A stretch of DNA of 64,000 nucleotides from Chlorokybus atmophyticus (GCA_009103225.1 RHPI01002090.1:768414-832413); one strand, 5' to 3'. Positions 4,141 through 61,059 are shown, counted from the stretch's first letter. Translations and numbers: made by a program. Notes: generated from the sequence alone by a model not told the origin.

Positions 4141-5471
4141 CAATCACAAGCGCGAGGTTAATTAAATTCAACAAGAGCTGCATGCAGTGAAAGACACGCT
4201 ATTATGATTCTGACGATTGACTTACAATTATCTATTCGTGCTCATCCCGCGACTTTTGGCTTTCATCTCATCTGACAACCTTGTATTCAAATGGCTTTGC
4301 CATTTGCGCTTAACTTGAGCCGAATCTGTGACTTATTGTCCACCTCTCTTTCATCTTGCTAAGACCTAAACAGTGTTTTAGACAAGTCCACTGATCTCAT
4401 TGCACGCGTAACCTCTTTTTAAGCAAACATATAAAGATATAGCTTCAAGTATGCGCGTTATAAGACTCGAGTAGGAAAGTCTAAGCCTGTTGATCACTAT
4501 TGTTTCATTACTATTCCACCTCCGCTAGGCCTAGCACTTCGCGCACCTATAACTACCCATAAATGGTGCAGTTGTGCGAGCTCAGATTCTTGTGCGACGC
4601 GATGTCGGATTCCAACATGCACGATGAGACACACATGATCAATGGAGCAAGAGACATAAGGCTAATTGTGGGCAGTTGGTAAACTTTACGGGTGGTAAAG
4701 GCGTCATATGCCTTCACCGGGTGTGGCAATGATCTCCTGCCATTTCATAATGGCAGCCCCCCCCCCCCCCCCNNNNNNNNNNNNNNNNNNNNNNNNNNNN
4801 NGCCCCCCCCCCCCCTCCGCGCGCGGTACGGGTGGTAAAGGCATCACACGCCTTCATCGCCGGGTAAAGGCACATGCCGCCTATACCACCCATATCAAAT
4901 CCCATGCGGTGGGTAGTACCCATTTTTTCCTGATTGCTTGGTGACTCAATATTATCACATTCAATAAGCTGCGCTTTGCGCTTGGTATCAAAGTCTGGTT
5001 CAACTTATAGGCCCTTTAAGTAAACTGTTGAATATGCGTTTAATTCAACAGCTAAGCTGTTTATCATCGCGCTGCAATCCAACTTAATATTAATATTAAT
5101 AATTCGTGTCCCTTTGCTTCGTGCTACAGTCGTTTCATTGTAGCCCAATAAGCTTTCATTTGCAAGTGCGCGTGCTGCAGATGTACATAGCTAAGTACAA
5201 TGCCTTTGGGACTACATATACATGATAAGCACGGACAAATGCAAGCATCTAAAGCAAGCTTGCACTAAAGCTTTACACAATGATGGCATTGCCAACTCTG
5301 TCATGCGTCTTCCTTCACATGTTCATGTGTATTCATTGTACATCACGAATAAACAATCATGTGCAACGGATGTTCCACTAACAATGCAACATGGAAATGC
5401 ACATACACAGTGGCATGCACAGTCAGCAGCATGCAGAGTGACATAGCGCATACCAACCACACTATTGTAAA

Positions 5472-9008: not shown

Positions 9009-12000
9009 ATGGCCGCAGGCGTCGAGAATGTGGCCGCAAAGGACATCTACTTCTACGCCAAGTCTGCCTTGAAGAGCAGTGCCGTGCTGCAAGCCATCTG
9101 CGGCCGCGTCAGGGATCCCGCTGTTATTGACGTTGTGCTCGGCAAGGTGAGCAGCCAGCCAGCATGCGTGCTGCTGCTTGCAACCAACGACGTGGTATTC
9201 ACTTGATGCACAGAGACAACTGCTCTTGTGCATGTGAACCAAAGAAACCAACAGCCTCAATCATAACATTCAAAGCAGCTCCATGAACAGAAGTGGTGTC
9301 CAAGCTTTTGCCGAATTGCTCTTCGTTAACACGTGAGACACGTTTGCTCAACGCACACTGTTTATCTTGTTGCAATTTGCTATGCCTTCGCGACTGACAG
9401 TGCAACAGCCGCCGTGTGTTTACAAACAACGTCGCATGATCTTATGTGTCCTCCCGAGGTTTGTCATAGATTACATGGTTGGTGTTCTCAACTGTTGAAG
9501 CTGATGTAGGAACAAATCACCACATCAACGTTCTGTACCCGTTCCTACACACACGCGCTCACGCGCACACGTGCATCCGCACACATGCAGTCGACGACAA
9601 CAACCAGCTCACTGTTGGTGCTTGTTCGCTTGGCAGGAGACAGTGTTGGAATTGCTCGCACAAGGGAACGATGGCTGTTTGCATTCGCTTTGCGAACAGT
9701 CAGTGTTCGGCACAATACGCGACCTGAAGCTACTGCCATGGACCTCAGAGCTCCGCCTGTCGTCTCCAGAAGCACAGGTTGGTCCCTGACTTCACAGTCT
9801 GTGTCGCAGTTTGCATGCCCCCCCCCCCCCCCCCCCCNNNNNNNNNNNNNNNNNNNNNNNNNNNNNNNNNNNNNNNNNNNNNNNNNNNNNNNNNNNNNNN
9901 NNNNNNNNNNNNNNNNNNNNNNNNNNNNNNNNNNNNNNNNNNNNNNNNNNNNNNNNNNNNNNNNNNNNNNNNNNNNNNNNNNNNNNNNNNNNNNNNNNNN
10001 NNNNNNNNNNNNNNNNNNNNNNNNNCCCCCCCCCCCCCCCCCCCCCAAAAGCACCAAGCAGTTGGTCGGAAACTTGAAGCAGTGGCACGCTGTTGTGTTC
10101 TTAAGTGCACGGTGCATCTTGGCCATTTCCTCTGCTTTCCATTGTTCTTCGTGCCTTTAAGCATGCTGGAGAAGAGTGAAGATCAGGCGGAGGGGGGTTT
10201 GGGACTACTTACCTGCAGTCGATGCACATGCACACATGCACATAAGTGTCGCATTGCCAAGAGCAGTGGCTGGTCTGGTGTTTATTGGTAGACTATTTAT
10301 TGTTATTGATGCGATCTGGATGTTGTTGGACATGTGCAAGCCAACAACAACCACTCCATCACTTGGTGCATCTCCTTGAAGCTTGACTACTTGTTGCTAC
10401 TGGCACGGTATACTTGACCACTGGTTCGTGCAGGGGAAGGATCTCCTAGTTCTCCTGTCTGATTCTGGGAAACTGTCGTTTGTCACATTCAGCAATGACC
10501 TGCATCGGTACGCGCTGGTGTTTGGTAGGTTTGCACTCTGTGTGTACTGTTTTTGTTGTCGCGAAGCGGTTGTTGTCGTAACCACTGTATTTGGTAGGTT
10601 TCTGGCTCTGTCCCAGGTGCATTTATCATATCCTGGATTTGATCGCCGAGAACTGGGGCGCTCACTAGCTATTGAGCAAAGGTACGACAGCAGCTGAGCA
10701 CTGCTGCTCAGGCAGTTGAGTCAATACTAATTCTCTCTCGCACATCTTCCCTGACCCGCTGTGTTGCCGCTGTGTACATTCAGGTCACGGGCGGTGGCTG
10801 TCTCCGCCTTTCAGGACCGTTTGTCTATCTTTCCTATTACATCATCCGCAGGAGATCGCATTGTTCAGGAGGTCAGTTCTCAACTGTTGCTGTTTGGTCT
10901 GTGTCACACACGTGTGCGTTGTGAGCAGTGCGCAACCGTTGTGACACACCTGCAGGGCACAGTATACCCAGGAGAGGCCTTTCCTGGTCCGCCCTGGGAG
11001 GCGCCTGATGGCAGCGCTGACGTGTCCTGCCCAAGCTGGGGAACTGTCTGGAGTATGGCGTTCATTGCATGCGATGCTGTGGATGTCGCGCGCGGAGTGG
11101 TCAAGCTGGCTATTATTCTTCACAGGTTGGCCGAATGATGGTGATGTCCAGCCTATTCCAAATTGAGAGAGAGCTTGTATAATTTACTTATTCCAATGCA
11201 GGCCAGGCACTCGAGGGAATGAGATTCAGATACTGAGCTGTTGGACTCATAATCACCACACCTGCTTAGAGGCGCGGTTCATGCCTCCCGGACTCAGTCC
11301 CGGCTACGCGCCAGCACTTGCCATCCAACTTGTTCCCACCGCGCACGTTGGCATGCTTTTGGTCATCTGCGAGGGGTGTGTGCTCCTACTGACTGTGGTG
11401 GCTGTGGCTCAAGCACCTGTGCTAGTTGGCAGTGTTAGGCTGCCTAGTGATGGCCTCTCGACCAGCAAACCGCCCTTCATTACAGCCTGGGAATGGGAAG
11501 CCAACGCGGGGTCGACCAGGCTTATCACCATCACCGACAAAGGCAACTTGCACCTCTTGCAGCTGACAAGTTCTGGCAATGGCGCTGAGCTGCAGCTTGG
11601 CCCTGTGCTGTACACTGCGAGACCCTGCAACCAGTTGTTATGGTTGGCACAGGGATGTGTTGCAGCATTTGTTGAACTTGGAGATGGCGTGATGCTTCAA
11701 TTTGCATCCAATGCTCAACTTCAGCACAAGTCGGACATCCTGAACACTGCGCCGCTTTTGGACTTTCAGATGGTGGACTTTTACAGCGAAAATCAGGATC
11801 AGATCTTTGCTGGCAGTGGGGTTGGAGTTGAAGGGTCCATTCGCGTGATTAGGAATGGCAACAAGGTGGAGCTCCTGCTGAGTTCACCTCCGCAATATGC
11901 TGGTGTTACTGGCGTATGGAGCTTGCGCCTGAGGCGGGAAGATACGTATCATTCTTACCTGGTCATGACGTTTGTGGATGCAACCCGCGTGCTTTCTGTT

Positions 12001-17199: not shown

Positions 17200-17444
17200 G
17201 CTCCGCGACGTCCCGCAGTGCGCGCGTGAAGTCGCCGCCGACAGCGGAAGAGGGTCCGGCCGCCAGGGTCTCCCGCAGGTGAGCAAACCGGCGCTCCTTG
17301 AGGCGCTAGAGGGGACAGCTGCTGCAATCGATCAGCGACACCCTGGGGCTTCCACCGGTTAACTCGCATGCGGGAGACCTGGCGCCGGACACTCTTCCGC
17401 TGCCAACGGCGACATCACGCGCGCACCGCAGGACATTGCGGAGC
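17200..17444. repeat. Long imperfect inverted repeat (foldback), about 84-94-bp arms
   Basis: 17200-17283 versus the reverse complement of 17363-17444: 71 of 84 columns identical (11 substitutions, 2 single-base indels). Pairing extends weakly to 17293/17353. Confidence 0.92.
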
Positions 17445-17668
17445 TTCTGGTGACGCTGATTCGGGGACTCAGCCGCAAGCCGTTGGACAGTCATCGATGC
17501 ATCTCGCACACACTCTCAAGTTCACGCCTTGCATAATGGGCAATGCGGCTGTGCGGACTAGCTGCAGTAATGCACCAACATACTTGGAAGGTGATTGACC
17601 CTATGTGCAAAGCTCCCAACTCAATCAACACCGACCCATCAAGCGCAATTTTCGGAGCTTCCGCATGC

Positions 17669-20600
17669 TCAAGTAAACGTGGTGAAATGTTGCTGTATGT
17701 CGTGCGGCTCGCATGCCTCGCCAACCAGAGTCAGCTTCTGGCACAGGCCAGGCGCAATGGTGTGCTCCACCAGTTGCGGGTGCAGAATGCGCGCCAGCAT
17801 TTCAACTCCATTTATCAACCTGCACGAGCCTGACATCGGTACTGGTACTGCTACAGCACATGCGCGTGTAACAACAACAACGGCAATCAGATTCACCTTG
17901 GACCGGGACGCGAGAAGAGCGCACTTTCGCAGATGTACACTTGTCCTGTCCGAACTGCCGGCAACGACCACCAACCAGGCAACGCCACCAGGTCTTGGAT
18001 CTGCATCAGTACGGAGGGAGAGTTTAAGCAAATCAAAACACCTCCAATGCTACCTGCGCCACACGCGCACGCGCACTCACACACACGCGTGCAAACATAG
18101 CATCTACGGGTACCTCAGCCATGGTTTTGCGCTGTGAAGAGGAACAGGGTGCAAGGATGAGCACTTCAGGAGCGTAGGTCACCACCTCATCCCACTCGAT
18201 CCGTCGCGCTGCGCATCCTGGCTCCTGGTTGGCAAGCACACGATGCTTTTGCCGTGTGCAAAACCACCACAACACCACACCGCACACGCGCAAACAAGTA
18301 GCCCACCTGCAGCTCGTCGCGCCCGCCAGCCAGCGTCTTCATCTCGCCGAGCCAGTGGCCGCCCAACACGATCGGCGAGAGTCCCTCCAGCGAGAGCACG
18401 CGTGGGCGGAAGCCCGATGGGACGGAGGCTACCGCCTGTGCGATGGCATCGAGTCGGGACTTTAGACTGTCGACCAAGGCCGTGGCACGGTTCTCCGCAC
18501 CGACCGCGTCGCCGATCTGGTGAATGGTATCCAGCATGTCACCCACCTGCGAGGTGTTGATGTCGTTCTTAGTGTCAACGTGCAGCACTGTGCGTGTCTG
18601 CGCGCGTGTCTGCGTGTGCGTACAGTGCGAGGTCGAAGAGTCAGGATGTTGACTTCCGGTGGCGCGAGCTTGGCGAGGGCCAGGGCGCGCGCAACCTCGC
18701 TGGTGTCCACATCGCAGGCGGCACATGTGTCCTGTTTGCAAAACAGTATTTTTCAATTGATCACGCAACAAGTCAGTAGATTGAGATACACTGTCGCGTG
18801 GGTTTATACCTGAGTGAGAATGAGATCGGGGCGCTGGTCAGCAATCCAGTCCGCATCCAAAGAGAACAGCTTCGCCCCGCTCTCTTTGATCTTTCGCAGC
18901 TGGTCGCACACACGCTTGGTCAAGAATGCTACATCACCAACGACATGATAACCTGCCGATCTGAGTATGAAATAGTACCTGTTGCTCAATCTCTTTGCTG
19001 GACAAGTCCTCTGTGCGGATGGCACTGCGGCTTACCTGCATGCCGCAACAACGCAAGGATGGTAGCGTCAGCGTTAACCCCATGCAGGGAAAACACGGGT
19101 TGAAAGCATGCGAACGCAGTGAGTAGCAACCAGCCAGGGACTGCATTGACTGACCACATGGCGGCCTTCTGAAATATTGCTGGGAAAATCGCAGAAGTCG
19201 CTTATGCCAATCACTCTGTCCAGCACACCTGTTTGACACATACAGCAAGTCGAATGGATCGTCGGCAGGCGCGACGACACGCGACAAGTACAAACAGTCC
19301 AACAAACATTGCAACACTGTGTTGTGTTGGCATGTGGTGACGACGCATGTTCTCTCACCCAAAGCGTGCAGTATCTCCGTCCCGCTCGGAAGCAACGAGC
19401 AGATGCGCTGCGCAGTGGTGGGCGTGCCAACATCACCCCCGCATTCGTTGGACGCCGCGGCGGGACTCATCATCCGCACACCCTCAAGCTGCACAGAACC
19501 GCCAAACACCCCTCAACCTCACCTCCTCAACAACCAACACGACAAGCCCTCCTAATTCCTTCTCACAACCCACCTGCTGATGAGACATCAACTCCGCTAC
19601 ATCCCGGCAACGGCTCACAAGCGAGGCCGCGAAGCGAGGGTTGCTGCCCCAGTGAAGGTGAACATAGCTGGCGAGGGCGTTGCCGAGTTGGTAACCCTCT
19701 AAGGTTGCGTTGGCGTTGGGCTGCTGGAGACGGACACTGTAAGCGTATGATAGAGGTGATGATGCTGGTGAGGATGCGCATGCGGGTTTCGGGCAGTCGG
19801 GGAGGCTCTCGGGGACGATCTCGCTGAAGTGGTAGACTTGGCCGCGGACCGTTTGCGAAGAGGGGAAGAGTGTACACGCGTCTTGAGTCTCGACCTGTAA
19901 GTTGCACACTTGAATTGGTACATGAGATACACATGACGTTGAGGCCATCCCAGTTGCTCACCTCCACATAACCCATCTTCATGGCGTGGACCATGCGCGT
20001 GCGGAAGGGAAGCACGCCGCACATCGAATGCACTCCACCATCTTTGGTCTGGTCGTTATGTAAACATTATCGTCACCATCATGCCTCTGACTATCATCCG
20101 CTTGCGCGTGTGCACACACCTGCAGGCTTTGAGACAAGTACATAAGGCCGCCGCACTCTCCGTAGACAATGCCGCCGCCGGCAGCAACATCCCTCACGGC
20201 TGCACGCATCTCCATGTTGGCCGCCAGATCCGCCGCATGCAGCTCAGGGTAGCCTGCATCAGGCTGATGATTGAACCAACAACATTGTGTGCGTTGCACG
20301 ACAACGACAAGTACGAGTACGAGTACCTCCGCCAAAGTACAGCCCGGTGACGCCAGATGGCAACGCTGAATCCATGATTGGTGAGAAGTACACCAGTTCC
20401 GCGCCAGCCTCTGCAGTATAAGCCACCAAATTGATTAAGTCTGTTATGCAAGCTATCCGTTGCAAACAAAGCTATCCTACCTTGCAGCAAGAAAAGGTTC
20501 TCATGGTAGTAGAAGCAGAATGCGGCGTCCCGTGCAACGCCGATGCGAACACGTGCAATGTGATCGGCTATGTGCGGGTGTTGGATGGTTATGCTCGGGA

Positions 20601-21843
20601 GCGCAGGTTGCGTGTCGGGTGAGATGTTGGCCACAGCAGAAGTGGATTGCAGCAGTGCGTCCAAGTCGAGGTTGTCCTCAACCAACGTCGCAAGCGTGTC
20701 CAAGTACTGGCGCGTCTGCGCTGGTGAGCACAGATGTCAACCACCTCTTCAGACTATACAAAGCAGTCACCATGGCAACCATCACCACCACCACCACCAC
20801 CACCACCATCACCATCACCATCACCTTGCGGTCCGTTAGCGACTTCCGCTGGCATGTGCAGCCCGAGGTGGCGCTCAGGTACAACGACGCGGTTGTCCTT
20901 GGGCACGGCCCCGAGGACGCAAACATCCGGCAAGGCCGACTCAAGAGCCTCTCTCAACCACGCTGCGTGTGCCTTACCCCCAACCTGACACACACCAGAG
21001 CGTGAGCATGTGGGTGATTGAGAGCGTGTGCATGTGACGAGTTCGAACTCCACCTTGTTCAGGACGAGGCCGGCGAAGGTGACGTTGGTGTCGAATGCGG
21101 TGAATCCAAGTGCGAGTGCGGCGGCGGAGCGTGCGAGGGCCCAGCAGTCGAGGACGAGGACGACGGGAGACCTGAGCCACTTGGACATCTCTGCGGTGCT
21201 GCCGACCTCACTACGACCGTCACGACCGTCATAAAGACCCATCACGCCCTCAACCACAGCAACGTCTGCGCCCGAGGCGTGCTTGCGAAATAACTCGATG
21301 TTGCTCTGCCTGCGCATAAACACACATGTTGAACGCACAGCACGCGCGTGCGTGCCACAGACCCTGCGTGCCACTGTTGACCCATGCAGGTTTTAACGGG
21401 CAGTACGCTTGGCATTATGCGTTGCATACAGGCATGTCGCTTACTTGTCCAGCATCCAGCCATCGAGGTTGATTGATGGCCGCCCGCAAGCGGCCTCATG
21501 GTGCATTGGATCCAAGAAGTCTGCGCACAATGCAAGCGGATATGCATCATTCCTGGCACCTCACACAAACGCAACCACAGCTGTACCAACGGATGCAAGT
21601 CGACACCTTGCGTGCAATGAGACGCAAGTGCAATGCAGCATGCAGTGCCAAAGCACCCGGCGTCGGCATGCACAGTGGTCATTGTCATAGTTGTCATAGC
21701 CCACGCGACTAACCTGGTCCAACTTTGAATGGCTGGACGTTAAGTCCCCTTCTTGTGAGTGCTGCCATGAGTCCCACCGCGACGCTGGTCTTGCCCACGC
21801 CGCTGTACGTTCCAGCAACTACCACCGCGGGAGGCACCGCCAT
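17669..21843 (-). CDS. cbiA: Cobyrinate a,c-diamide synthase (CbiA/CobB) fused to a C-terminal BtuF-like periplasmic-binding-protein domain; 18 exons, about 850 aa
   Basis: 18 exons with GT-AG introns and consistent phases (2553 nt including stop): 21843-21714, 21520-21445, 21309-21054, 20984-20825, 20720-20481, 20410-20327, 20253-20120, 20048-19962, 19894-19574, 19488-19359, 19228-19155, 19035-18979, 18899-18810, 18731-18624, 18546-18307, 18224-18114, 18000-17897, 17819-17669. CbiA motifs: [76 protein letters not shown] motifs: [64 protein letters not shown]. The gene symbol refers to the N-terminal domain only. Confidence 0.93.
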
Positions 21844-22641
21844 ACTGGAAATATCCGCGTCCACCTCCGATTCTACATGCACGGAGAATGCGGAACTGTC
21901 CCCACGCACAGTTTCAACCGCCGGCGGCAACAACAATGTCGCCCATGCCGCCAGCAATGCTACGCCGCATGCGGCAGCAGCAGTGTGCCTGTGCGAGTTA
22001 TGGCCGCAAGTTACGTCACTGCGAGTACGCTGATGTCAAAACCTGGCGCTGTAACTAGCTGTCGTAATCTGTTCGTCTCGGCTCGTGACTTCAGTGCGGC
22101 CGATCCGGATCGGCTAAGTTTGTACCGAGAACTGGACTTGAGTGAGATTGAAATGACAAAGGGGGCTGTGCTCAGTGCAGTGCACCAGGCAGCACACATG
22201 CTGGCGGCAACGGGGCTCACCCACCCTGGTACCGCCCTGGTGACATGGTTGGCATTTTGTGAAGTGATTGGAGTCTGGTTCCGTGACATAGAGTTGCTAC
22301 AGGACTCTGCACTGGCACAGGCTGAGTAGTCAATACCCAGGTAAGCGTTGCCTTGCGCTTGTTTGGCGCTGTAGGCGTGGCTTCCTGCATTGTACGTGGG
22401 CAACGCGTACAAATCAAGCTCGTTCAGCTGTTGACACATTGAGAGTTAGCATACGCATCCATGACACGCACAAGCACACGCACGAACACGCACACACTGC
22501 TACTCCCACCCACAACACCCATCCTCCCCCCCCCCCCCCCCNNNNNNNNNNNNNNNNNNNNCCCCCCCCACCCCACCCCACCCATCCACATACAAACAAA
22601 CAAACAAACAAAAACACTCACTCTTCTTCCAGTCGCAAAAG

Positions 22642-25600
22642 ATGTCCCGTCCTCCCTCCTCCTCCTCCTCCCGTCCCCCTCCCGTCCTCCCCTCCCCCGC
22701 CTGGCCCGCGTCCGCCGCCATTGCCGCCCCGGCCTGGCCCTCCCACTCCACCCCTCCCGTCCGCCGCACGCTCAGCGCAGGATCGTCGGCAGGCGGCGTG
22801 CCCGCGCTCGCGCTGCCGAGTGCGGGAAGAGCAACAGGAGGGAGCAGTGTCGGGAGCACGCCGAGGATCTCAGGTGGTGGTGTTGGGGTGTCGGGACGGA
22901 GCGGACACGATGGATCGACAAACGATGGATCGGGTGAGTAGTAGTTGGTGGCTGGGGTTGTGAGCAAGCGTTGACGCTCACGTGAAAGAAAGTCCTCATC
23001 GTGTCCGACAACTGGTTGGTTGGTGATAGGAGCGTTGATAGTGGTTGTCGAGAGGCTGACGTTGAGGCTGTCGTTGAGGTTGGCACTTTTGTAGGTGAGG
23101 AGCGTGCGCAGTTCGAGGCGTTGAAGGACGACATCCGTGCGCTGCACCGCGCGCTGATGCGCTGCACGGGACCGGCGGAGGACTCTGCATCTACAACAGC
23201 GGAGACAGTGTTGCCTCGACGGCCCGCCACGGGGTACGGCACGCGCCCGGGAGCTGCTGTTCACAGTAACGTCAAACACGCGCATGCGCGCCCCGCCACA
23301 GCCGACAACCGCCGCGCCACCCAAGCACAGGTAGAAGGGCGTGTCTCTCACGCTTGTCAGATTGGACTTGTTGACGCTGGCTTGCCAATGACAGTCCTAG
23401 TCATGCGACATGCATGCGCATGCACATGTGAACGCACACACGCACGCACACGCAGACGCGCCCCCCCCCCCCCCNNNNNNNNNNNNNNNNNNNNNNNNNN
23501 NNNNNNNNNNNNNNNNNNNNNNNNNNNNNCCCCCCCCCCCCCTGCCACACACACACGTCTCTCGCAGAATGAGGAGTGGGCTCATGCTGATCTCGAGGGC
23601 CGTTTGCGTCGCCACGAGTGGTCCCGCGATCCTCTCCAGCGCGCTTCCGCGCAGCTGGCCCTCGCCGACCTTCTCTCCGCCAAGGCCGCGGAGCTCCAGC
23701 GCCGCGCACTCGCAGCCACGGACAGGTACTTCCCGCACTCACGCGGCGGCGGAAGCAACACCAACAACGCAGCCACGAACAATCCAAAAGGAGGAGGAGG
23801 GGAGAGTGTAGGCTACGTTTCGATGTCGCTGTTGTCGTCGTCGTCGCATCTGAACACGTTTGTCTGCGCCGCGCAACGTACAGCCGACCTCGCGTCCCTC
23901 GTGGACGAAACAAGGTGAGAGAGGGCAGCTTACACTCTTGCGTCGTGTACAATGAGACACACCATAACCAAGTGGCAAGTTGTAATGATGATGATGATGA
24001 TGGCGGTCCACATCATCATCATCATCGTCGTCGTTGCTACTGTCTTGACAGCTGTGAGTGCGCACCTGCATGCGTGCGTGTGCACGTCTGCGCTCACGCA
24101 CATGTGTGTGCCAAACCAGAAGTGTGCAAGTGCGGATGCAGCAGGAGTTGGCCGTGGCATCTGCGCGTGCTCGCAGCCTCGATGAAGAGAACGCCGCGTT
24201 GCACACATCTCTCATCGCTTCCCTTTCCGCATCATCAAAACAAAGCTCACCACCTTCATCAAAGCCAACAACCACAAAGACGACAGCCGCGCAAACACTC
24301 GACGATGGCCACATCTCATTGACTCAGCAGCAAGAGCGAGAGCGCGAGCGCGAGGATGCGCGCAGGGCTATCCGCCACCTGCGCGGGGAGAACGAGGACT
24401 TGCACAGGAGTGTGGATGAGTTGAGACTGAAGGAGAGGGTGCTTGCGAGCAGGAGTGCGGGCAAGCACCTGCTGACGTGCGGCATGCAGACGGATGCGGT
24501 GATGCATGTATGCACTTCTTGCGTCGAGTTGCGTAAAAGGGTGGCATCCCAACAGTCCGCTCTCAGTGCAGCAATAGCAGGTAGGTGCAAACCCACACAC
24601 CTGTGCCTTCTTCTTGCGTTCCCATGCCTTAGCCGCATACTACTCATGTCGTGTGCGTGTGCATGTGTGTTCGTGCACGTGCGTGTATGCGTGCATACGC
24701 GTATGGATGTATACGCAGAGTCCTCGCACATCATGGCAGCATTGCGTCGCCAGCTGGCGGACTCGGAGTCCGCCCGCGTTCATGCCATCACTGAAGCATC
24801 CGAGCAGGCCTCCGCCCATGCACAGGCTATACAGAGAGAAGAAGCCGCCTGCGCTTTGGCCGAGGAAGCCGCTGGGCGGTGTGAAGAGTACCGCAGGCGA
24901 GTCGAAGAGTTGGGTCGTGCGAATGAGCACGCAGATTACAGACTGGCTGAGAGAGACTCGGAATTGAGTGACGTGAAGCGGGAGTTTGAAGGTGTGACGA
25001 TTGTTGGTCTCACATCTGCACGCGTGTACACACCAAGTACACATGTGTGTACAGGTGTGTGTTGTAGATCTCACTGAGGGTTGTGTTTGTGAATTGGTGG
25101 TTGGTACAGATGTGAGGTTGCAGCTTCAAGGCGCTTGCGCTGAGACGGCAGCTCTGCACACGAGACTAGCGGACAGCGAGGCGCAGAGCCTGAAGCGCAT
25201 CGATGAGTTGATGAACAACGGCATTGCAACCGAGGCTAAAGCGCGAGAACTCGCGCAGAAGCTCACCCGCAGCGAACAGAAGGTGACTGGCTGAGACGTT
25301 CCCGATACTCACACAAAATCTCACATGCACACGTTCTTTCGTGGGCGCACACGCACCCACACATGCGCACATGTTCGCACACGTACATATGCACGCACAC
25401 GCGCGCACACACACCGTCCTCTACTTTGCAGCGCAAAGAGGACGCGCGGTTCATCAGCACGCAATGCTCCGCACGTCTCCGTGACCACGAGTTCGAAGAG
25501 GTCATGCGCGTCGAGCACGAGGCGATCGCGAAGTTGCGGAAGCAACTCGAGGGCGAAGCGCGCGCACTCAAGTCCATCAGCCTGCTTGCCAGACACAACA

Positions 25601-43300: not shown

Positions 43301-46300
43301 TGTGCTCTATGTAATGTAATGTGTGATGTCCATGCATGTGCATTGCACTACATTATTTGTACACCAATTACTAGCTTTAGCATGTACAATGTGGTTTGTG
43401 GTTACATTCAAATTCAGCCAATTGCAAACTGAGATGCACTTGCGATGAACAATGACACGAGAGTCTTGCAAAAGAACACATATCAATTAACAATTAGGTG
43501 GATCCCCCCCCNNNNNNNNNNNNNNNNNNNNNNNNNNNNNNNNNNNNNNNNNNNNNNNNNNNNNNNNNNNNNNNNNNNNNNNNNNNNNNNNNNNNNNNNN
43601 NNNNNNNNNNNNNNNNNNNNNNNNNNNNNNNNNNNNNNNNNNNNNNNNNNNNNNNNNNNNNNNNNNNNNNNCCGCCCTTTGCCCCTTTTACCCATTCATT
43701 ACATGCGAGACAAAGTCATGTTGGTTGCAGATTGCAAAATGCATTATGACGTCAAGCCGGTTGATTCGCGTAAAACGCAAATTAACATCTGCATCGTGCA
43801 TGATGAGCGAGCAATGCATAGTAGCACAAGCACTTCAAAGTTTGCTTTATTTGAGTGCACAGCGACAGTGAACTGCTGCAGCACTTGCAACAAGCTTTCA
43901 TTATAATAATAATTATGTATGCACAATAAGCAAAGAAATATGGATCGGCAAGGCAAGTTAACACATCCTCTTCGCATCTATTGTACACTTGCTCCTATGT
44001 ATACACAAAGCAGCACAATGGAATTGTGATGAACACAAATACAAGCACGCTTAAAGACTGCCATTCCAAGCAAACCGTACAAACCCGCCATCGCAGGCAC
44101 ATAGGTGCAACTTGCGCGATGTGACATCACGGTTGGTGACGGCTTAAATACAAACACATATGCACAAGCGCCGCACATGGTTAGGAAGGCTTGCCGTAAG
44201 TCGCGAGCACTGGGTGCTTCAACGCAACGCGCCCACGTCGCGAGTCGCGGCGCCGCCAGATAAATGGCTGCATCGCGCGGCCAGGTTGGTTAGCACCGTT
44301 CAATGTGAATGATCGAAAGAAGCATAAACGGTCAACCGCAATGATTCTGGTAGTCGACTGATCAACCGGCTTGCGTTTACTGCTCGGCCGTTATCAATTG
44401 CATATGCCTGGACTGGGCAAGGCCGATTTGTACCGGTCACTTTTTTGCACTGAGGGACAATACCTCCCCATCTATATCTCTCGTGGCTTACTTGTAACAA
44501 ATACAAGTGAACCACGAGACGTTCAATTGTGATAATATGTACTATGATGTTATATATTCATTACATGGTATAGGTTTAGGGTTTGGTCCAACGGCTTATT
44601 AAGCCCTCAATTCGGAGAGCACCCTATTGCAGTATTGAACTCATCTCATTTAATGGGTGTTAGGTTGTAGCATTTGAGTTGAGTTATCATAAGCGAATGC
44701 ACTTGAACTCATTTTGGTTCCGTACCAGACAAATCGCATACTCACAAAGCGCATACATTTCAATAACATATGCCAAGTTGTATAAGCCCATCGGCAAGAG
44801 GATTTTCACAACCAAACAATTGCCAACTCATCTCATTCAAGCATTACTCAATCAATCCATTGCATAACATATGTCATATTTCACTTGTTTTTATACTTGT
44901 CGCCATTTGCAGTGTAATAGATCCTTAACTTTGAGGCCATCCGTACATTTGCGCAACAACATGAGTTGTTTAACACATGATTGGATAACAATGCAATCGC
45001 TACACCAAACACATGAAGAACGCGTGCATCTGCGTGTGCATTGACATGCATGAGGTGCAATGTGCGGGTGTGCAATCATTAGTAAACATAGGCCTAGTGT
45101 CCAGTGCAGTATGTGCGAGTATCTGTGTGAGCCTGTTGGTGTGTGTGCACGCACGTGTATGCAGATGCGCAGGCTAGTGCAATGCAGCGTGTGCACTTGT
45201 GTGTGTCGGTCAATGTAGGCTTCCTGTGTAGTGCAGTGTGCGTCTTTATCTTTTGTCTCTTGGTGTGCGTGCATACATGTGCCAGTCAGTGTATGCGTGC
45301 ACATGTATGCGTGTGTGTGCGTGTGTCAGACAAGCAGTGTGTGCGCGTGCAGTGCTTTGCACGGGTGTCAGTCAATGTGGGCCTGGGGTGCAGTGTGTGC
45401 GGGTAAATGAGTGCTTATTGGCGTGTGCGCGCGCGTGCTCCAGCGTGTGTGTACGTGTGCGTGCGTGCACTGACTTGCCTAGCAGCCGTGCCTCTTTGGC
45501 GATGGTCGGCCGCTACGCCTTCATGGCCGCCTGCTCTGCGGCCTGGAGTCTAATCCATCTGTGTGCAGTCTGTAATATGGCCAGCGCTACTGCCCAACAG
45601 AGCTGCACAGCTCTTTCGCCGCCGCCTCGCAGCCGCCGTCCTCACTGCCGCCAGTGCCGCCGCCACGTGGCCAGAATTTACGGGCACAACGTGACTGGCC
45701 AAGGCGGACCTCACGTGAACACGCCGACGATTCTCCATCGCCGACGGAAGTCCCAGTATGCCGACGGACTGCCCGCGATGGTCGACGGGCCGGCGGCTTG
45801 CGGCCCGCAAGTTGCGGGCCACGGAGCAAGCCTTTCTCACTTTCCTGGTTCCATGCGCACTTACCGCAATTACTTGGTCAGTGCCCCCCTTTCCTGAAAG
45901 CCCCCCACCCAATAATGACGGGGGTATGCTATCAGAGGAGGGCTCTATTAATCGAGGGGGGCTGTATTCGGCCGCAGTATGGTACCATACGACGGCCGCC
46001 GTACGGAGTTTTAGCCGACTTTACGTCTTTTAGCCTGTTTTATTGTGTTTTGGCCTGTTAGAGGGGCCCTAGGCTAGGCGGGTAGGGGGGGTTGTATACG
46101 AAAAGGCGGGGTTGTGCTGCACAACTTGTGCATGTAAACATAACCCCCTCCCCAAAAACCATGGGGGGGACACTATTAGAGGGGGGCTTCAAACCGGGTA
46201 CATACGGTCTCTGCATTGTGCAATTTTTGGCATCTATTACACGACGGTGCTGCATGTGACAACTCGGTTGATATGGGGCAAGCACGGGCGCGATGTAGAA

Positions 46301-59233: not shown

Positions 59234-61059
59234 CAAGAAGAAGGCTGCCCAAGCTCAGAAGGCGAATCACAAGATGTGCAAGGGTTGCACATGGTTGTTG
59301 ATTTGCGATGCAATTGCTTGTGGGCATTCAAATGATCTGGGGGGCGCAGTCGTGACCCAAGCAACCTGAATGCTGTCGTGCTCTGTGCGCCCTTGCGCCC
59401 TTGTGCGGCCCACGCCTTGCTATCTTCATAAGCATGCATTCACCTACTTACTATCCAAAAACATCAACATTGCCGCACTCGTTTTTGTGTTTGCCCCCAC
59501 CCCTGCAATGTTGGTGACTTGGCTGCCATATATCATGGCGGCCAGCTATATCGCTTGCCGATGGTTGTGCATGCGATGTTCAGCACAGTAATCAATGCAA
59601 TATGCACACATGGGTAGCAGGATACATGGGTAGCTGTGCACAAGCATGTCAAGTTGAAAGGGGCGATGAAGTGTGGAACTTCTCATGCCTTAATGTTTGT
59701 AATCACCACTTCTATCCAGCACGCGCGTGGGGGCGGCATGGAGGGGAGGCGCGGGGGGGGGGATGNNNNNNNNNNNNNNNNNNNNNNNNNNNNNNNNNNN
59801 NNNNNNNNNNNNNNNNNNNNNNNNNNNNNNNNNNNNNNNNNNNNNNNNNNNNNNNNNNNNNNNNNNNNNNNNNNNNNNNNNNNNNNNNNNNNNNNNNNNN
59901 NNNNNNNNNNNNNNNNNNNNNNNNNNNNNNNNNNNNNNNNNNNNNNNNNNNNNNNNNNGGGACATCTTAGTCAGGTGTCATTGCGATGCTACAGCTTGAC
60001 AAGACAATGTATGCAGCCGAAGTCAGCGTTTGCGAGACCTTGCAACATATGTAGTTTACAAGCAGGCGGTCTTGCAAATCTCGAGGGATATGCATCGTGT
60101 AGGCTGGCGGCGGCGTGGACACGATTAGTGCGATATTTGATGGAACACCGTGTTCCATGGCGTATGGGGCATATATATGAGACATGAGGCTCTTTTATTG
60201 ACAACAAATTTTGCCATAGCATAATCTTAAATGTGTCATAACATCAAATCTCGATGCACAGCGTCGCTAAGTAGTTGGCTACTCGGTAGCAAGGAGAGGC
60301 TCTCCCTTGCCCGCCTTTGAATTGCGACTCTACCCAAACTATGCTAAAGTCCTTTCGTATCTATCCGAAACGGGTGGTGGTGATTGTAAGTGGCGCACAT
60401 TAACAGTGTCTGATAAGTGTTGAACATCATGTCACACGAAACCCGATGATATAAGATTTGACTGAAGAGCAACAAGTGGTATATAAGCTTCGCTGCCGTA
60501 TAGTAGCATTATGTGTGTGCTTTTTGAATGGCAAATTTTGCAACTGATGCAACGCTTGATTAGGAGTTTTTGAAGATGCTCTTCTTATTATTCCGTATAT
60601 GTTCTTGACAGCGTGCACACCCGCGATACCCTCTGAAGGTACGTATGCACGCCGCCGAATGTACGTCATGTGTCATATGTGCACATACCACATGAATGTG
60701 GTGCATGCGCATGTGTGGGCTCATGCCTGTTATTAACCTTGCATATGCCTGCAATCTCAAGCCGCTTGGCACACACGCCGGTAATGTGTGAAGCTGAGGA
60801 AGGTGTTACACGTCAGTCTGTATATGTTCATGTGTTTTCGTGCCGCGGGTGTCACGCCCAAAGGGCTGGCAAAAGTCACTCTCATGTTCCTTACTTATGT
60901 GGTAAGTAAAAAAAACTAAGTGAGAATCCCGTATAGTCAAGTTGTGTAGTACTTGGCATATGTGCTCATGAAATTAGTACTTGGGCACTTGGTGTGCAAG
61001 GGCGTTGTAGCTACACATAGGCGCTGTCTACCAGCAAGCACAGAGCTGGTCGGTGTCAT

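What the first reader, a model, noticed from the sequence alone, without database searches (positions are those of the whole stretch)
17669..21843. Spliced eukaryotic gene fusing an intact B12-pathway amidotransferase (CbiA/CobB) to a BtuF-like corrinoid-binding domain
Seen: 18 exons with 17 GT-AG introns join in phase into one ORF of about 850 aa. The N-terminal about 500 aa keeps the CbiA/CobB P-loop (GTYSGVGKT), [24 protein letters not shown], the GATase nucleophile (GECGG) and the YVHLHW His motif. The C-terminal about 340 aa is a class III substrate-binding-protein domain of the BtuF/Fe-B12 type. Established: de novo cobalamin synthesis is confined to prokaryotes, where CbiA/CobB amidates the a and c side chains of cobyrinate/hydrogenobyrinate (the homologue CfbB does so on Ni-sirohydrochlorin), and BtuF-type proteins are normally separate exported ABC components. 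The algal B12 handling I know of (CBA1 uptake; CobT/CobS/CobC-type lower-ligand remodelling) does not involve this step. Inference: an anciently acquired, fully domesticated bacterial module that captures incomplete corrinoids or another tetrapyrrole with the binding domain and amidates them in cis, i.e. an undescribed salvage, repair or sensing route. No other cob/cbi gene is in this window. I cannot exclude that homologues are already annotated in other algae or bryophytes.
Basis: partly seen in the sequence, partly recalled or inferred. Interest (0 to 1): 0.9.

Follow-up and report, generated by a model that had tools for sequence, protein, structure and literature searches.

The report
Algal CobB amidase fused to corrinoid-binder
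A green alga that cannot make vitamin B12 still carries and expresses an intact bacterial-type B12-pathway amidating enzyme fused to a cytosolic BtuF-like binding domain; the same unstudied fusion occurs in many algae, early land plants and water moulds and probably repairs or salvages imported B12-like molecules.

Summary
The minus strand at 21843-17669 carries an 18-exon gene with 17 GT-AG introns. One spliced RNA contig spans both halves, including the 19574/19488 fusion junction, and moves one acceptor to 18899. The 850-aa product is identical to the existing JGI/EukProt model of Chlorokybus atmophyticus.

The N-terminal half scores as a CobB/CbiA a,c-diamide synthase, well above curated cut-offs and 50-54% identical to bacterial enzymes, with every catalytic motif intact. 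The C-terminal half is not an exported BtuF. It belongs to an unnamed, signal-less bacterial subfamily of class III binding proteins, 45-49% identical, with conserved cysteines.

The fusion is not unique. It occurs in streptophyte algae, liverworts, mosses, lycophytes, ferns, prasinophytes, oomycetes and dinoflagellates, and carries automatic names there. I found no functional study.

The bacterial relatives of the binding domain sometimes lie beside cobB, cobO, cobQ and btu genes, or beside another amide ligase. In land plants reported to lack B12-dependent methionine synthase, the catalytic cysteine is often lost.

Corrinoid salvage or repair is the best reading but is unproven (about 0.45). 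An earlier scan note reports METH in this genome. The scan had not noted this fusion before.

The parts
17669..21843 (-). Coding span, ATG to TGA. 18 exons, 2553 nt, 850 aa. Identical to EukProt/JGI model Chlat1 3948.
21844..21961 (-). 5' UTR, at least 118 nt, covered by an RNA contig. No in-frame ATG lies upstream, so the protein starts directly at the P-loop with no transit peptide.
17300..17668 (-). 3' UTR, covered by the same RNA contig, which runs on past 17300.
21714..21843 (-). Exon 1. Holds the P-loop GTYSGVGKT at 21813-21787.
21445..21520 (-). Exon 2. Completes KVGPDFLDP.
21054..21309 (-). Exon 3. Holds EGVMGLYDG.
20825..20984 (-). Exon 4. Holds PERHLGL.
20481..20720 (-). Exon 5. Linker and start of the GATase_3 domain.
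20327..20410 (-). Exon 6.
20120..20253 (-). Exon 7. Holds the glutaminase nucleophile motif GECGG at 20161-20147.
19962..20048 (-). Exon 8.
19574..19894 (-). Exon 9. End of the CobB half, with YVHLHWG at 19666-19646.
19489..19573 (-). Intron 9 (85 nt), the junction between the two halves. If retained it gives an in-frame stop. It is spliced out in the RNA contig.
19359..19488 (-). Exon 10. Disordered linker and start of the binding domain, with [11 protein letters not shown] at 19407-19375.
19155..19228 (-). Exon 11. Holds DFCDFP.
18979..19035 (-). Exon 12.
18810..18899 (-). Exon 13. The acceptor at 18899 is fixed by RNA; my first model had 18914.
18624..18731 (-). Exon 14. Completes TQDTCAACD, the CxxC motif.
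18307..18546 (-). Exon 15. Holds GGHWLGEM.
18114..18224 (-). Exon 16. Holds PGC and PCSS.
17897..18000 (-). Exon 17.
17669..17819 (-). Exon 18. Conserved C-terminal tail and the stop codon.

Best explanation
This is a nuclear, expressed gene of Chlorokybus atmophyticus. It has no N-terminal extension, so the protein is probably cytosolic. It has two parts.

Residues 1-496 are a complete CobB/CbiA-type enzyme. The P-loop domain activates a carboxylate with ATP. The GATase_3 domain, with Cys349 in GECGG, supplies ammonia from glutamine. In bacteria this chemistry converts the a and c acetate side chains of cobyrinate or hydrogenobyrinate into amides.

Residues 523-850 follow a roughly 20-residue disordered linker. 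They form a two-lobed class III binding-protein domain from a signal-less, unnamed bacterial subfamily. Its conserved residues, including four or five cysteines, sit on the loops that line the cleft between the lobes.

Proposed mechanism: the binding domain holds an imported corrinoid that has free a or c carboxylates, either an incomplete corrinoid or a de-amidated B12 analogue. It presents the corrinoid to the tethered amidase, which restores the amides so the cofactor can serve B12-dependent enzymes such as METH.

Shown: the gene structure, its transcription as one message, the family membership of both halves, the intact catalytic motifs, the wide conservation of the fusion, and the occasional linkage of the two families in bacterial cob salvage clusters.

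Inferred: the ligand, the substrate, cooperation between the domains in cis, and the cytosolic location.
For: One spliced transcript covers both halves, and the model equals the database protein.

CobB identity:
- NF002204 scores 479.6 bits against a cut-off of 254, and TIGR00379 scores 426.6 against 261.
- The half is 50-54% identical over 97% of its length to bacterial cobyrinate a,c-diamide synthases.
- All motifs match the bacterial enzymes.

Binding half:
- It is 45-49% identical, E about 1e-90, to 323-aa bacterial proteins that begin '[13 protein letters not shown]' with no signal peptide.
- The predicted structure is confident, with pLDDT 91.8.
- Its nearest folds are heme binders and BtuF.

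Bacterial linkage of that subfamily:
- btuF-like/FecCD/ABC, then SBP-like, then CobO, CobB, CobC, CobQ.
- SBP-like directly followed by CobB.
- CobU, CobT, CobS, CobB, CobO, a TonB-dependent receptor, SBP-like, CobQ.
- FecCD, ABC ATPase, Dph6-like, SBP-like, CobO.
- An independent bacterial CbiA-TM-BtuF fusion sits in a CobU-T-S-C-[fusion]-CobO operon.

Eukaryotes: the sequences form one clade in the CobB tree. Catalytic residues are intact in algae, oomycetes and a dinoflagellate. The Cys nucleophile is lost in Riccia, lycophytes and a fern-like sequence, lineages in which METH was not found according to PMC11439496. An earlier scan note (s1-171893, not tested here) reports METH in this genome.
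Against: - No ligand or activity has been shown for any member of the eukaryotic fusion family or of the signal-less subfamily.
- Only 2 of 80 representative bacterial loci have CobB within 10 kb of the SBP-like gene. Most neighbours are unrelated or lineage-specific.
- The bacterial CobB genes that lie next to SBP-like genes are not the closest relatives of the eukaryotic CobB half, so the fusion was not inherited as that operon.
- The gene persists as a long ORF in liverworts, mosses and lycophytes, which are reported to lack METH. Marchantia and the mosses keep the catalytic Cys.
- Ostreococcus, a B12 auxotroph, has a diverged ERHLGL motif.
- AlphaFold gives no confident arrangement between the domains: full-length pTM is 0.63 and the linker is disordered.
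- The fold search cannot separate B12, heme and siderophore binders.
- The conserved cysteines have no counterpart in BtuF as I recall it, and could indicate a metal or iron-sulfur site.
Confidence: 0.45

Rival explanations
1. The enzyme amidates another tetrapyrrole, such as a sirohydrochlorin- or siroheme-type isobacteriochlorin, as the paralogue CfbB does. The binding domain would then hold that molecule or heme.
For: The CfbB model NF033195 still scores 408 bits. The fold matches to heme binders (PhuT, ShuT, BhuT) are as good as those to BtuF. The gene is kept in land plants reported to lack METH, and those plants do make siroheme (my own knowledge).
Against: The CfbB score is below its cut-off of 560, while the CobB models are far above theirs. 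Identity to bona fide CobB is 50-54%. The bacterial neighbours are cob and btu genes. The protein has no transit peptide, whereas plant siroheme synthesis is plastidic (my own knowledge).
Confidence: 0.12
2. The C-terminal domain handles a metal or carries an iron-sulfur cluster through its conserved cysteines. It would then act as a chelatase-like or redox partner of the amidase rather than as a corrinoid holder.
For: Cys56, Cys120, Cys123 and Cys237 (domain numbering) are invariant or nearly so in the 39-sequence alignment, and Cys260 is nearly so. They lie on loops after strands. One bacterial relative follows an Opp/Nik-type transporter. Twelve Chloroflexota loci have a flavin reductase gene just downstream.
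Against: The nearest solved folds are binders of tetrapyrrole-sized ligands. The N-lobe motifs align with BtuF. The cysteine motif is lost in liverworts, which keep the rest of the domain.
Confidence: 0.15
3. The protein is mainly a non-catalytic B12 or tetrapyrrole sensor, chaperone or scaffold. The amidase chemistry would be dispensable.
For: The long ORF is retained with the glutaminase Cys replaced in both Riccia species, Diphasiastrum, Selaginella and a fern-like sequence. ERHLGL is lost in lycophytes.
Against: In Chlorokybus, and in most algal and protist orthologues, every catalytic motif is identical or near-identical to active bacterial enzymes. That pattern argues for selection on catalysis.
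Confidence: 0.12
4. The gene is a functionless relic in Chlorokybus, or the fusion is an artefact that joins two genes.
For: None beyond the absence of functional data. The RNA evidence is an assembled contig rather than single long reads.
Against: The intron-free contig crosses the junction with 133 nt on its shorter side. The frame is open for 850 aa. The same architecture occurs in dozens of distant eukaryotes.
Confidence: 0.03

Closest known systems
Bacterial cobyrinate/hydrogenobyrinate a,c-diamide synthase (CbiA of Salmonella, CobB of Pseudomonas denitrificans; NCBIfam NF002204, TIGR00379)
   Same: The same two-domain enzyme, a P-loop synthetase plus a GATase_3 domain. All catalytic motifs are present. 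It is 50-54% identical to bacterial members and scores far above the HMM cut-offs.
   Different: It is encoded in a eukaryotic nucleus with 17 introns. The organism has no known corrin ring pathway. It carries a 330-aa binding domain at its C-terminus. Its substrate is untested.
BtuF, the periplasmic B12-binding protein of the BtuCD-F importer
   Same: It has the class III two-lobed fold, with TM-score by target of 0.77-0.86 to Vibrio and E. coli BtuF. The N-lobe motifs SL.P..TE and (S/C)D(Y/F)P align.
   Different: It has no signal peptide. The BtuF HMM scores only 23-27 bits against a cut-off of 234. It has its own conserved cysteines and a C-terminal tail. It is fused to an enzyme rather than partnered with a transporter.
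Unnamed signal-less Peripla_BP_2 subfamily of bacteria and some archaea (for example P0206, P0222; Chloroflexota, Acidobacteriota, Tectimicrobiota, Nitrospirota)
   Same: It is 45-49% identical over the whole domain, with the same motifs and the same C-terminal tail.
   Different: The bacterial proteins are free-standing, or are fused or adjacent to Dph6-like ligases or DUF5522. The eukaryotic domain is fused behind CobB. In the tree the eukaryotic and bacterial sequences fall on opposite sides of one branch, with support 89.
Ni-sirohydrochlorin a,c-diamide synthase CfbB (coenzyme F430 pathway)
   Same: It is a paralogous enzyme with the same chemistry on a and c acetates. The model scores 408 bits.
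   Different: The score is below the family cut-off of 560, and the CobB models score higher.
CBA1, the algal cobalamin acquisition protein
   Same: Both are algal proteins linked to B12 handling with a distant BtuF-like binding domain (my own knowledge of the literature).
   Different: As I recall, CBA1 is a secretory-pathway uptake protein with no enzyme domain. This protein lacks a signal peptide and carries a CobB enzyme. I made no sequence comparison here.
Bacterial CbiA-TM-BtuF fusion (P0181) in a CobU-CobT-CobS-CobC-[fusion]-CobO operon
   Same: It has the same domain order, CobB then a Peripla_BP_2 domain, in a corrinoid salvage setting.
   Different: Its binding domain is the ordinary exported type, placed behind a hydrophobic segment. 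It lacks the cysteine motifs. Its CobB half lies outside the eukaryotic clade. It is therefore an independent fusion.

Membership tests
CobB/CbiA a,c-diamide synthase | Whole-protein HMM score above the curated cut-off | tested here: met
   NF002204 scores 479.6 bits (cut-off 254). TIGR00379 scores 426.6 (cut-off 261.4).
CobB/CbiA a,c-diamide synthase | N-terminal P-loop synthetase domain with GxxSGxGKT and the GPD(F/Y)(I/L)DP motif | tested here: met
   GTYSGVGKT and KVGPDFLDP align with the bacterial enzymes.
CobB/CbiA a,c-diamide synthase | GATase_3 domain with the Cys nucleophile and C-terminal His motif | tested here: met
   GATase_3 matches with E 5e-29. GECGG and YVHLHWG are conserved.
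CobB/CbiA a,c-diamide synthase | ATP- and glutamine-dependent amidation of the a and c carboxylates of cobyrinate or hydrogenobyrinate | not testable with these tools
   This needs an enzyme assay.
CobB/CbiA a,c-diamide synthase | Operates within a corrin biosynthesis pathway, with other cob/cbi genes in the organism | tested here: inconclusive
   No other cob gene is in the window. I did not survey the whole genome. Eukaryotes are not known to make corrins.
CfbB (Ni-sirohydrochlorin a,c-diamide synthase) | HMM score above the curated cut-off | tested here: not met
   408 bits against a cut-off of 560.
CobQ/CbiP cobyric acid synthase | HMM score above the curated cut-off | tested here: not met
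   25-39 bits against cut-offs of 273-310.
BtuF (periplasmic B12-binding protein) | HMM score above the curated cut-off | tested here: not met
   NF002894 scores 23-27 bits against a cut-off of 234.
BtuF (periplasmic B12-binding protein) | Export signal and partnership with a BtuCD-type permease | tested here: not met
   The domain sits inside a protein with no signal peptide. Its bacterial kin start at the first strand.
BtuF (periplasmic B12-binding protein) | Class III (Peripla_BP_2) two-lobed fold | tested here: met
   Pfam PF01497 matches with E 2.5e-19. The model has pLDDT 91.8. Foldseek matches BtuF, PhuT and ShuT with E 1e-12 to 1e-15.
BtuF (periplasmic B12-binding protein) | Binds cobalamin | not testable with these tools
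   This needs a binding assay.
Signal-less Cys-rich Peripla_BP_2 subfamily (unnamed) | Full-length similarity and shared motifs ([12 protein letters not shown](Y/F)P, TQDxCxxCD, GGHW, PGC, PCSS, FSRPGPR, conserved tail) | tested here: met
   45-49% identity over 92% of the query, E about 1e-90. Alignments A1 and A2 show the motifs.
Eukaryotic CobB-SBP fusion family (automatically named, uncharacterised) | Same domain order, and placement inside the eukaryotic clade in trees of both halves | tested here: met
   Domain scans agree. In the CobB tree the eukaryotic clade has SH-aLRT 99. The binding-domain tree puts eukaryotes and bacteria on opposite sides of one branch with support 89, though eukaryotic monophyly is not resolved there.

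The most novel reading that the evidence does not exclude
The signal-less, Cys-rich binding domain defines a widespread and undescribed cytoplasmic module for handling corrinoids or other tetrapyrroles. It recruits unrelated ATP-dependent amide ligases. These are CobB-type in many eukaryotes and some bacteria, and Dph6-like in other bacteria and, going by Atlas cluster labels, in diatoms. DUF5522 is often attached as well. Together they would form a side-chain re-amidation system that repairs de-amidated or incomplete B12 analogues. B12-dependent eukaryotes would have inherited it early, and land plants would be losing it along with B12 use.
Probability: 0.3. Interest if true: 0.85.

Novelty: new variant of a known kind. 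Interest (0 to 1): 0.65.

Why it matters
Eukaryotes are held to be pure consumers of vitamin B12. Known algal B12 handling covers uptake, lower-ligand remodelling and cofactor trafficking. An intact, conserved and expressed corrin-ring amidase in many B12-using eukaryotes would add an enzymatic step on the corrin ring itself.

If it repairs or completes corrinoids, it changes which B12-like compounds in water and soil count as bioavailable to algae. It would also explain scattered 'CobB' hits in algal transcriptomes that earlier studies listed without comment. And it would give a function to a large, unnamed family of cytoplasmic binding-protein-fold proteins in bacteria.

The hypothesis can be tested directly with recombinant protein and with knock-outs in tractable species that carry the gene, such as Ostreococcus, Marchantia and Physcomitrium.

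Tried and rejected
- Pfam on single exons gave only weak or partial hits. Full-length scans became possible once the database copy P0160 was found.
- I tested whether the bacterial SBP-like subfamily is regularly encoded next to cobB. It is not. Only 2 of 80 species-representative loci have CobB within 10 kb, 2 have CobO and 1 has CobQ. Clustering of neighbours found no universal partner. The linkage is real but occasional.
- I tested whether the eukaryotic fusion descends from the bacterial SBP-like/CobB gene pair or from the bacterial CbiA-TM-BtuF fusion. The CobB tree rejects both.
- Full-length AlphaFold gave no confident inter-domain geometry (pTM 0.63). It therefore gives no structural support for, or against, hand-over of a ligand in cis.
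- No solved structure is related by sequence to the CobB half. No curated NCBIfam model covers the binding subfamily.
- Six literature searches and the text of seven papers turned up only passing mentions of eukaryotic CobB-like sequences (PMC4057078; bioRxiv 10.1101/2020.07.01.177865) and no characterisation.
- Contamination is rejected because the gene has spliceosomal introns that are removed in RNA.
- I could not type the spliced protein into the tools, so searches on the whole protein and its halves used P0160, which one search showed to be identical.
Full report
**1. The observation**

On the minus strand between 21843 and 17669 I joined 18 exons. All 17 introns begin GT and end (C)AG. 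They are 67-193 nt long, mean 95 nt.

Public RNA runs of the same organism hold the locus. When laid on 17300-22300, one 2915-nt contig of run X1 lacks the introns and reproduces the 15 junctions the tool listed; two more were not shown. These include 19574/19488, the junction between the two halves, with 133 nt on its shorter side. The contig continues through a 3' UTR of at least 370 nt. A second contig covers exon 1 and at least 118 nt upstream.

The RNA corrected one detail. The acceptor of exon 13 is at 18899, not at the 18914 I had first chosen. This removes five residues and gives 850 aa. The corrected protein is identical to database protein P0160, labelled EukProt 'jgi/Chlat1/3948/Chrsp26S04208'. 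The window is therefore Chlorokybus atmophyticus, and the gene model already exists.

If intron 9 were retained, the frame would stop inside it. The fusion therefore depends on splicing, and the RNA shows that splicing. There is no in-frame ATG upstream of 21843 within the transcribed 5' region. The protein thus starts six residues before the first strand of the P-loop domain and has no targeting extension.

**2. The N-terminal half**

- Pfam finds CbiA at residues 7-192 and GATase_3 at 266-474.
- NCBIfam places it in the CobB equivalog NF002204 with 479.6 bits (cut-off 254) and in TIGR00379 with 426.6 bits (cut-off 261).
- The CfbB model stays below its cut-off, at 408 against 560. The CobQ models score about 25-39 bits.
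- The half is 50-54% identical over 97% of its length to bacterial enzymes from Acidobacteriota, Actinomycetota and Cyanobacteria.
- In an alignment with 34 bacterial sequences, the P-loop, GPDF(I/L)DP, NLDGWM, EGVMGL(F/Y)DG, PERHLGL, GGGYPE, (G/A)ECGGLMYL and the HxH motif are identical or nearly so.
- No solved structure is related by sequence.

**3. The C-terminal half**

Pfam finds Peripla_BP_2 at 527-792 with E 2.5e-19. The BtuF, IsdE and other curated models score far below their cut-offs.

Its real relatives are about 323-aa proteins from Chloroflexota, Acidobacteriota, Tectimicrobiota/Entotheonella, Nitrospirota, Binatota, Planctomycetota and a few archaea. They are 45-49% identical over 92% of the query, with E about 1e-90. 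These proteins begin 'M(K/R)[11 protein letters not shown]', which is the first strand of the fold, and have no signal peptide.

Bacterial and eukaryotic members share these motifs: LPSGTE, CD(Y/F)P, TQDxCxxCD, GGHW(I/L)PE, PGC, PCSS, FSRPGPR and a conserved C-terminal tail.

AlphaFold models the domain with mean pLDDT 91.8 and pTM 0.89. By the secondary-structure map, the conserved motifs lie on loops that follow the strands of both lobes. That is where class III binding proteins hold their ligand; this last point is an inference from topology.

Foldseek's best solved matches are a staphylococcal iron-binding protein, the heme binders PhuT, ShuT, BhuT, RhuT and HmuT, and BtuF of Vibrio and E. 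coli. Among reviewed proteins the top matches are YvrC, the Halobacterium cobalamin-binding protein and Vibrio BtuF. 'BtuF-like' is therefore correct for the fold and for the ligand size class. Membership in BtuF proper fails on score and on export.

For the full-length protein, AlphaFold gives pLDDT 88.6 but pTM 0.63, with residues 500-520 disordered. The model is two well-folded bodies on a flexible tether.

**4. Distribution**

An exhaustive profile-free search with exons 3-4 returned many long proteins. Domain scans show CbiA + GATase_3 + Peripla_BP_2 in them, and some carry Kelch repeats and DUF5522 as well.

Named members:
- Mosses: Physcomitrium and Ceratodon.
- Lycophytes: Selaginella and Diphasiastrum.
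- Fern: Pteridium.
- Streptophyte algae: Spirogloea, Mesotaenium, and Chara and Closterium (partial models).
- Chlorophytes: Chloropicon, Monoraphidium, Ostreococcus tauri and Cymbomonas.
- Oomycetes: Aphanomyces and Saprolegnia.
- Dinoflagellate: Prorocentrum.

No seed plant appeared, but the word-based search is not exhaustive.

In a maximum-likelihood tree of the CobB half, all 24 eukaryotic or fusion-type sequences form one clade (SH-aLRT 99). The clade is nested among mainstream bacterial CobB. Its sister group, with support 89, includes cyanobacterial and acidobacterial enzymes. Inside the streptophytes the order is Zygnematophyceae, Chara, then liverworts, mosses and lycophytes.

In the tree of the binding half, the bacterial free-standing proteins fall on one side of a branch (support 89) and the eukaryotic domains on the other. 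Eukaryotic monophyly is not resolved there. Both were quick searches, and the donor lineage is unresolved. The simplest reading is one old fusion that was inherited vertically in green plants.

**5. Clues to function from bacteria**

Some relatives of the binding domain lie in corrinoid salvage settings:
- P0206 follows a btuF-like gene, a FecCD permease and an ABC ATPase. It precedes CobO, CobB, CobC and CobQ.
- P0222 overlaps the start of a CobB gene, which is confirmed as CobB at 477.7 bits. A second Peripla_BP_2 gene follows. Locus L016 repeats this arrangement.
- L024 reads CobU, CobT, CobS, a nitroreductase-family protein, CobB, CobO, a TonB-dependent receptor, the SBP-like gene and CobQ.
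- L027 reads FecCD, ABC ATPase, a Dph6-like ATP pyrophosphatase, the SBP-like gene and CobO.

A separate bacterial protein, P0181, fuses CobB through a hydrophobic segment to an ordinary BtuF-type domain. It sits inside a CobU-CobT-CobS-CobC-[fusion]-CobO operon.

The linkage is occasional, however. Among 80 species-representative loci:
- 2 have CobB within 10 kb, 2 have CobO and 1 has CobQ.
- 12, all Chloroflexota, have a Flavin_Reduct gene 69-222 nt downstream.
- 6, from three phyla, have a Dph6-like gene close by, 5 of them within 80 nt and 1 at 582 nt.
- The rest have unrelated neighbours.

ESM Atlas cluster labels add three architectures: bacterial Dph6-like + Peripla_BP_2 fusions, bacterial Peripla_BP_2 + DUF5522 proteins, and a mostly diatom cluster with DUF5522 and Peripla_BP_2. 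These are leads only, not verified by alignment.

The recurring theme is a cytoplasmic binding module placed beside an ATP-dependent enzyme that makes amides.

**6. Clues from eukaryotes**

The catalytic motifs and the CxxC motif are intact in Chlorokybus, Spirogloea, Chloropicon, Monoraphidium, the oomycetes, Prorocentrum and several unnamed Kelch-bearing orthologues. Mesotaenium keeps the catalytic motifs, but its binding half is poorly modelled.

In land plants they erode:
- The glutaminase Cys is Gly in both Riccia species, Ser in Diphasiastrum and in a fern-like sequence (P0154), and Ala in Selaginella.
- ERHLGL is lost in the lycophytes and in P0154.
- The CxxC pair is lost in liverworts, Diphasiastrum and ferns.

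Dorrell et al. 2024 (PMC11439496) report METH across algae and streptophyte algae. Among land plants they found it only in hornworts.

The pattern fits an ancestral B12-linked enzyme that lost constraint where B12 use was lost. The sample is small, though. Marchantia and the mosses keep the Cys, and the B12-auxotroph Ostreococcus has a diverged ERHLGL motif.

**7. Reading**

I commit to a cytosolic corrinoid a/c side-chain amidase with a tethered corrinoid-holding domain, serving salvage or repair, at about 0.45.

Rivals:
- another tetrapyrrole as substrate (0.12);
- a metal or iron-sulfur role for the Cys-rich domain (0.15);
- a mainly non-catalytic sensor or chaperone role (0.12);
- a relic or an artefact (0.03).

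**8. Novelty**

The gene model and its homologues are public and carry automatic names. Six full-text searches and the text of seven papers gave only passing listings of eukaryotic 'CobB' hits (PMC4057078; bioRxiv 10.1101/2020.07.01.177865). I found no study of the fusion or of the signal-less binding subfamily. Subscription-only literature was not searchable.

I class it as a new variant of a known kind. The specific gene is ordinary as an annotation, and the biology behind it is open and testable.

Noticed in passing
Orthologues P0003, P0151 (Riccia), P0158 (Diphasiastrum), P0088 (Selaginella), P0154 (fern-like): The glutaminase nucleophile Cys of GECGG is replaced by Gly, Ser or Ala, and ERHLGL is lost in lycophytes, yet the roughly 1000-aa ORFs are kept. 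The amidase looks catalytically dead in several land-plant lineages.
   Followed up: partly
L010, L012, L025, L070, L011, L017, L019, L014, L018, L009, L015, L008 (downstream of the match at about 10001-10970): In 12 loci, 11 titled Chloroflexota/Dehalococcoidia and one an unclassified bacterium, a Flavin_Reduct (PF01613) gene lies 69-222 nt downstream of the signal-less SBP-like gene. As I recall, the corrin reductase CobR belongs to this family.
   Followed up: partly
L027:9297-10001, L049:9234-9974, L068, L064, L076, L071: A Dph6-like ATP pyrophosphatase (diphthine-ammonia ligase family) lies beside the SBP-like gene in six loci from three phyla, within 80 nt in five of them. Atlas cluster labels show the two fused in other bacteria.
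   Followed up: partly
C-termini of P0164, P0008, P0166, P0176, P0037, P0006: Oomycete, dinoflagellate and related orthologues end in DUF5522, with the motif YVDPxSGYxVFT...RxCCGxxCRHCPWGHxNV. Most have Kelch repeats before it. Atlas labels show DUF5522 also attached to bacterial and diatom SBP-like proteins.
   Followed up: partly
L001:3302-5584: This is a bacterial protein with CobB, a hydrophobic segment and an ordinary BtuF-type domain in one chain. It sits inside a CobU-CobT-CobS-CobC-[fusion]-CobO operon. If the gene call is right, a cytoplasmic amidase would be anchored to a periplasmic B12 binder.
   Followed up: partly
window 20772-20833 (intron 4): A (GGT/GAT)n microsatellite lies inside intron 4. 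The reads tool skipped it as a repeat.
   Followed up: no
window 21844-21961: The 5' UTR holds out-of-frame upstream ATGs, one followed directly by TAG (a minimal upstream ORF).
   Followed up: no
window 22542-22561, 23475-23529, 4773-4801, 9838-10025, 43512-43671, 59766-59958: Assembly gaps (runs of N). The one at 22542 sits about 700 nt upstream of the gene's start codon, next to a poly-C tract.
   Followed up: no
P0155 (Physcomitrium), P0157 (Ceratodon), P0161 (Mesotaenium), P0162 (Chara): Several database models of orthologues lack the P-loop exon or part of the binding domain. These are probably gene-model errors rather than real losses.
   Followed up: no
P0354 (Rhizophlyctis rosea, a chytrid): A 467-aa CobB-only protein from a chytrid fungus groups inside the eukaryotic clade of the CobB tree on a long branch. 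I could not tell whether it is an unfused form, a truncated model or contamination.
   Followed up: no
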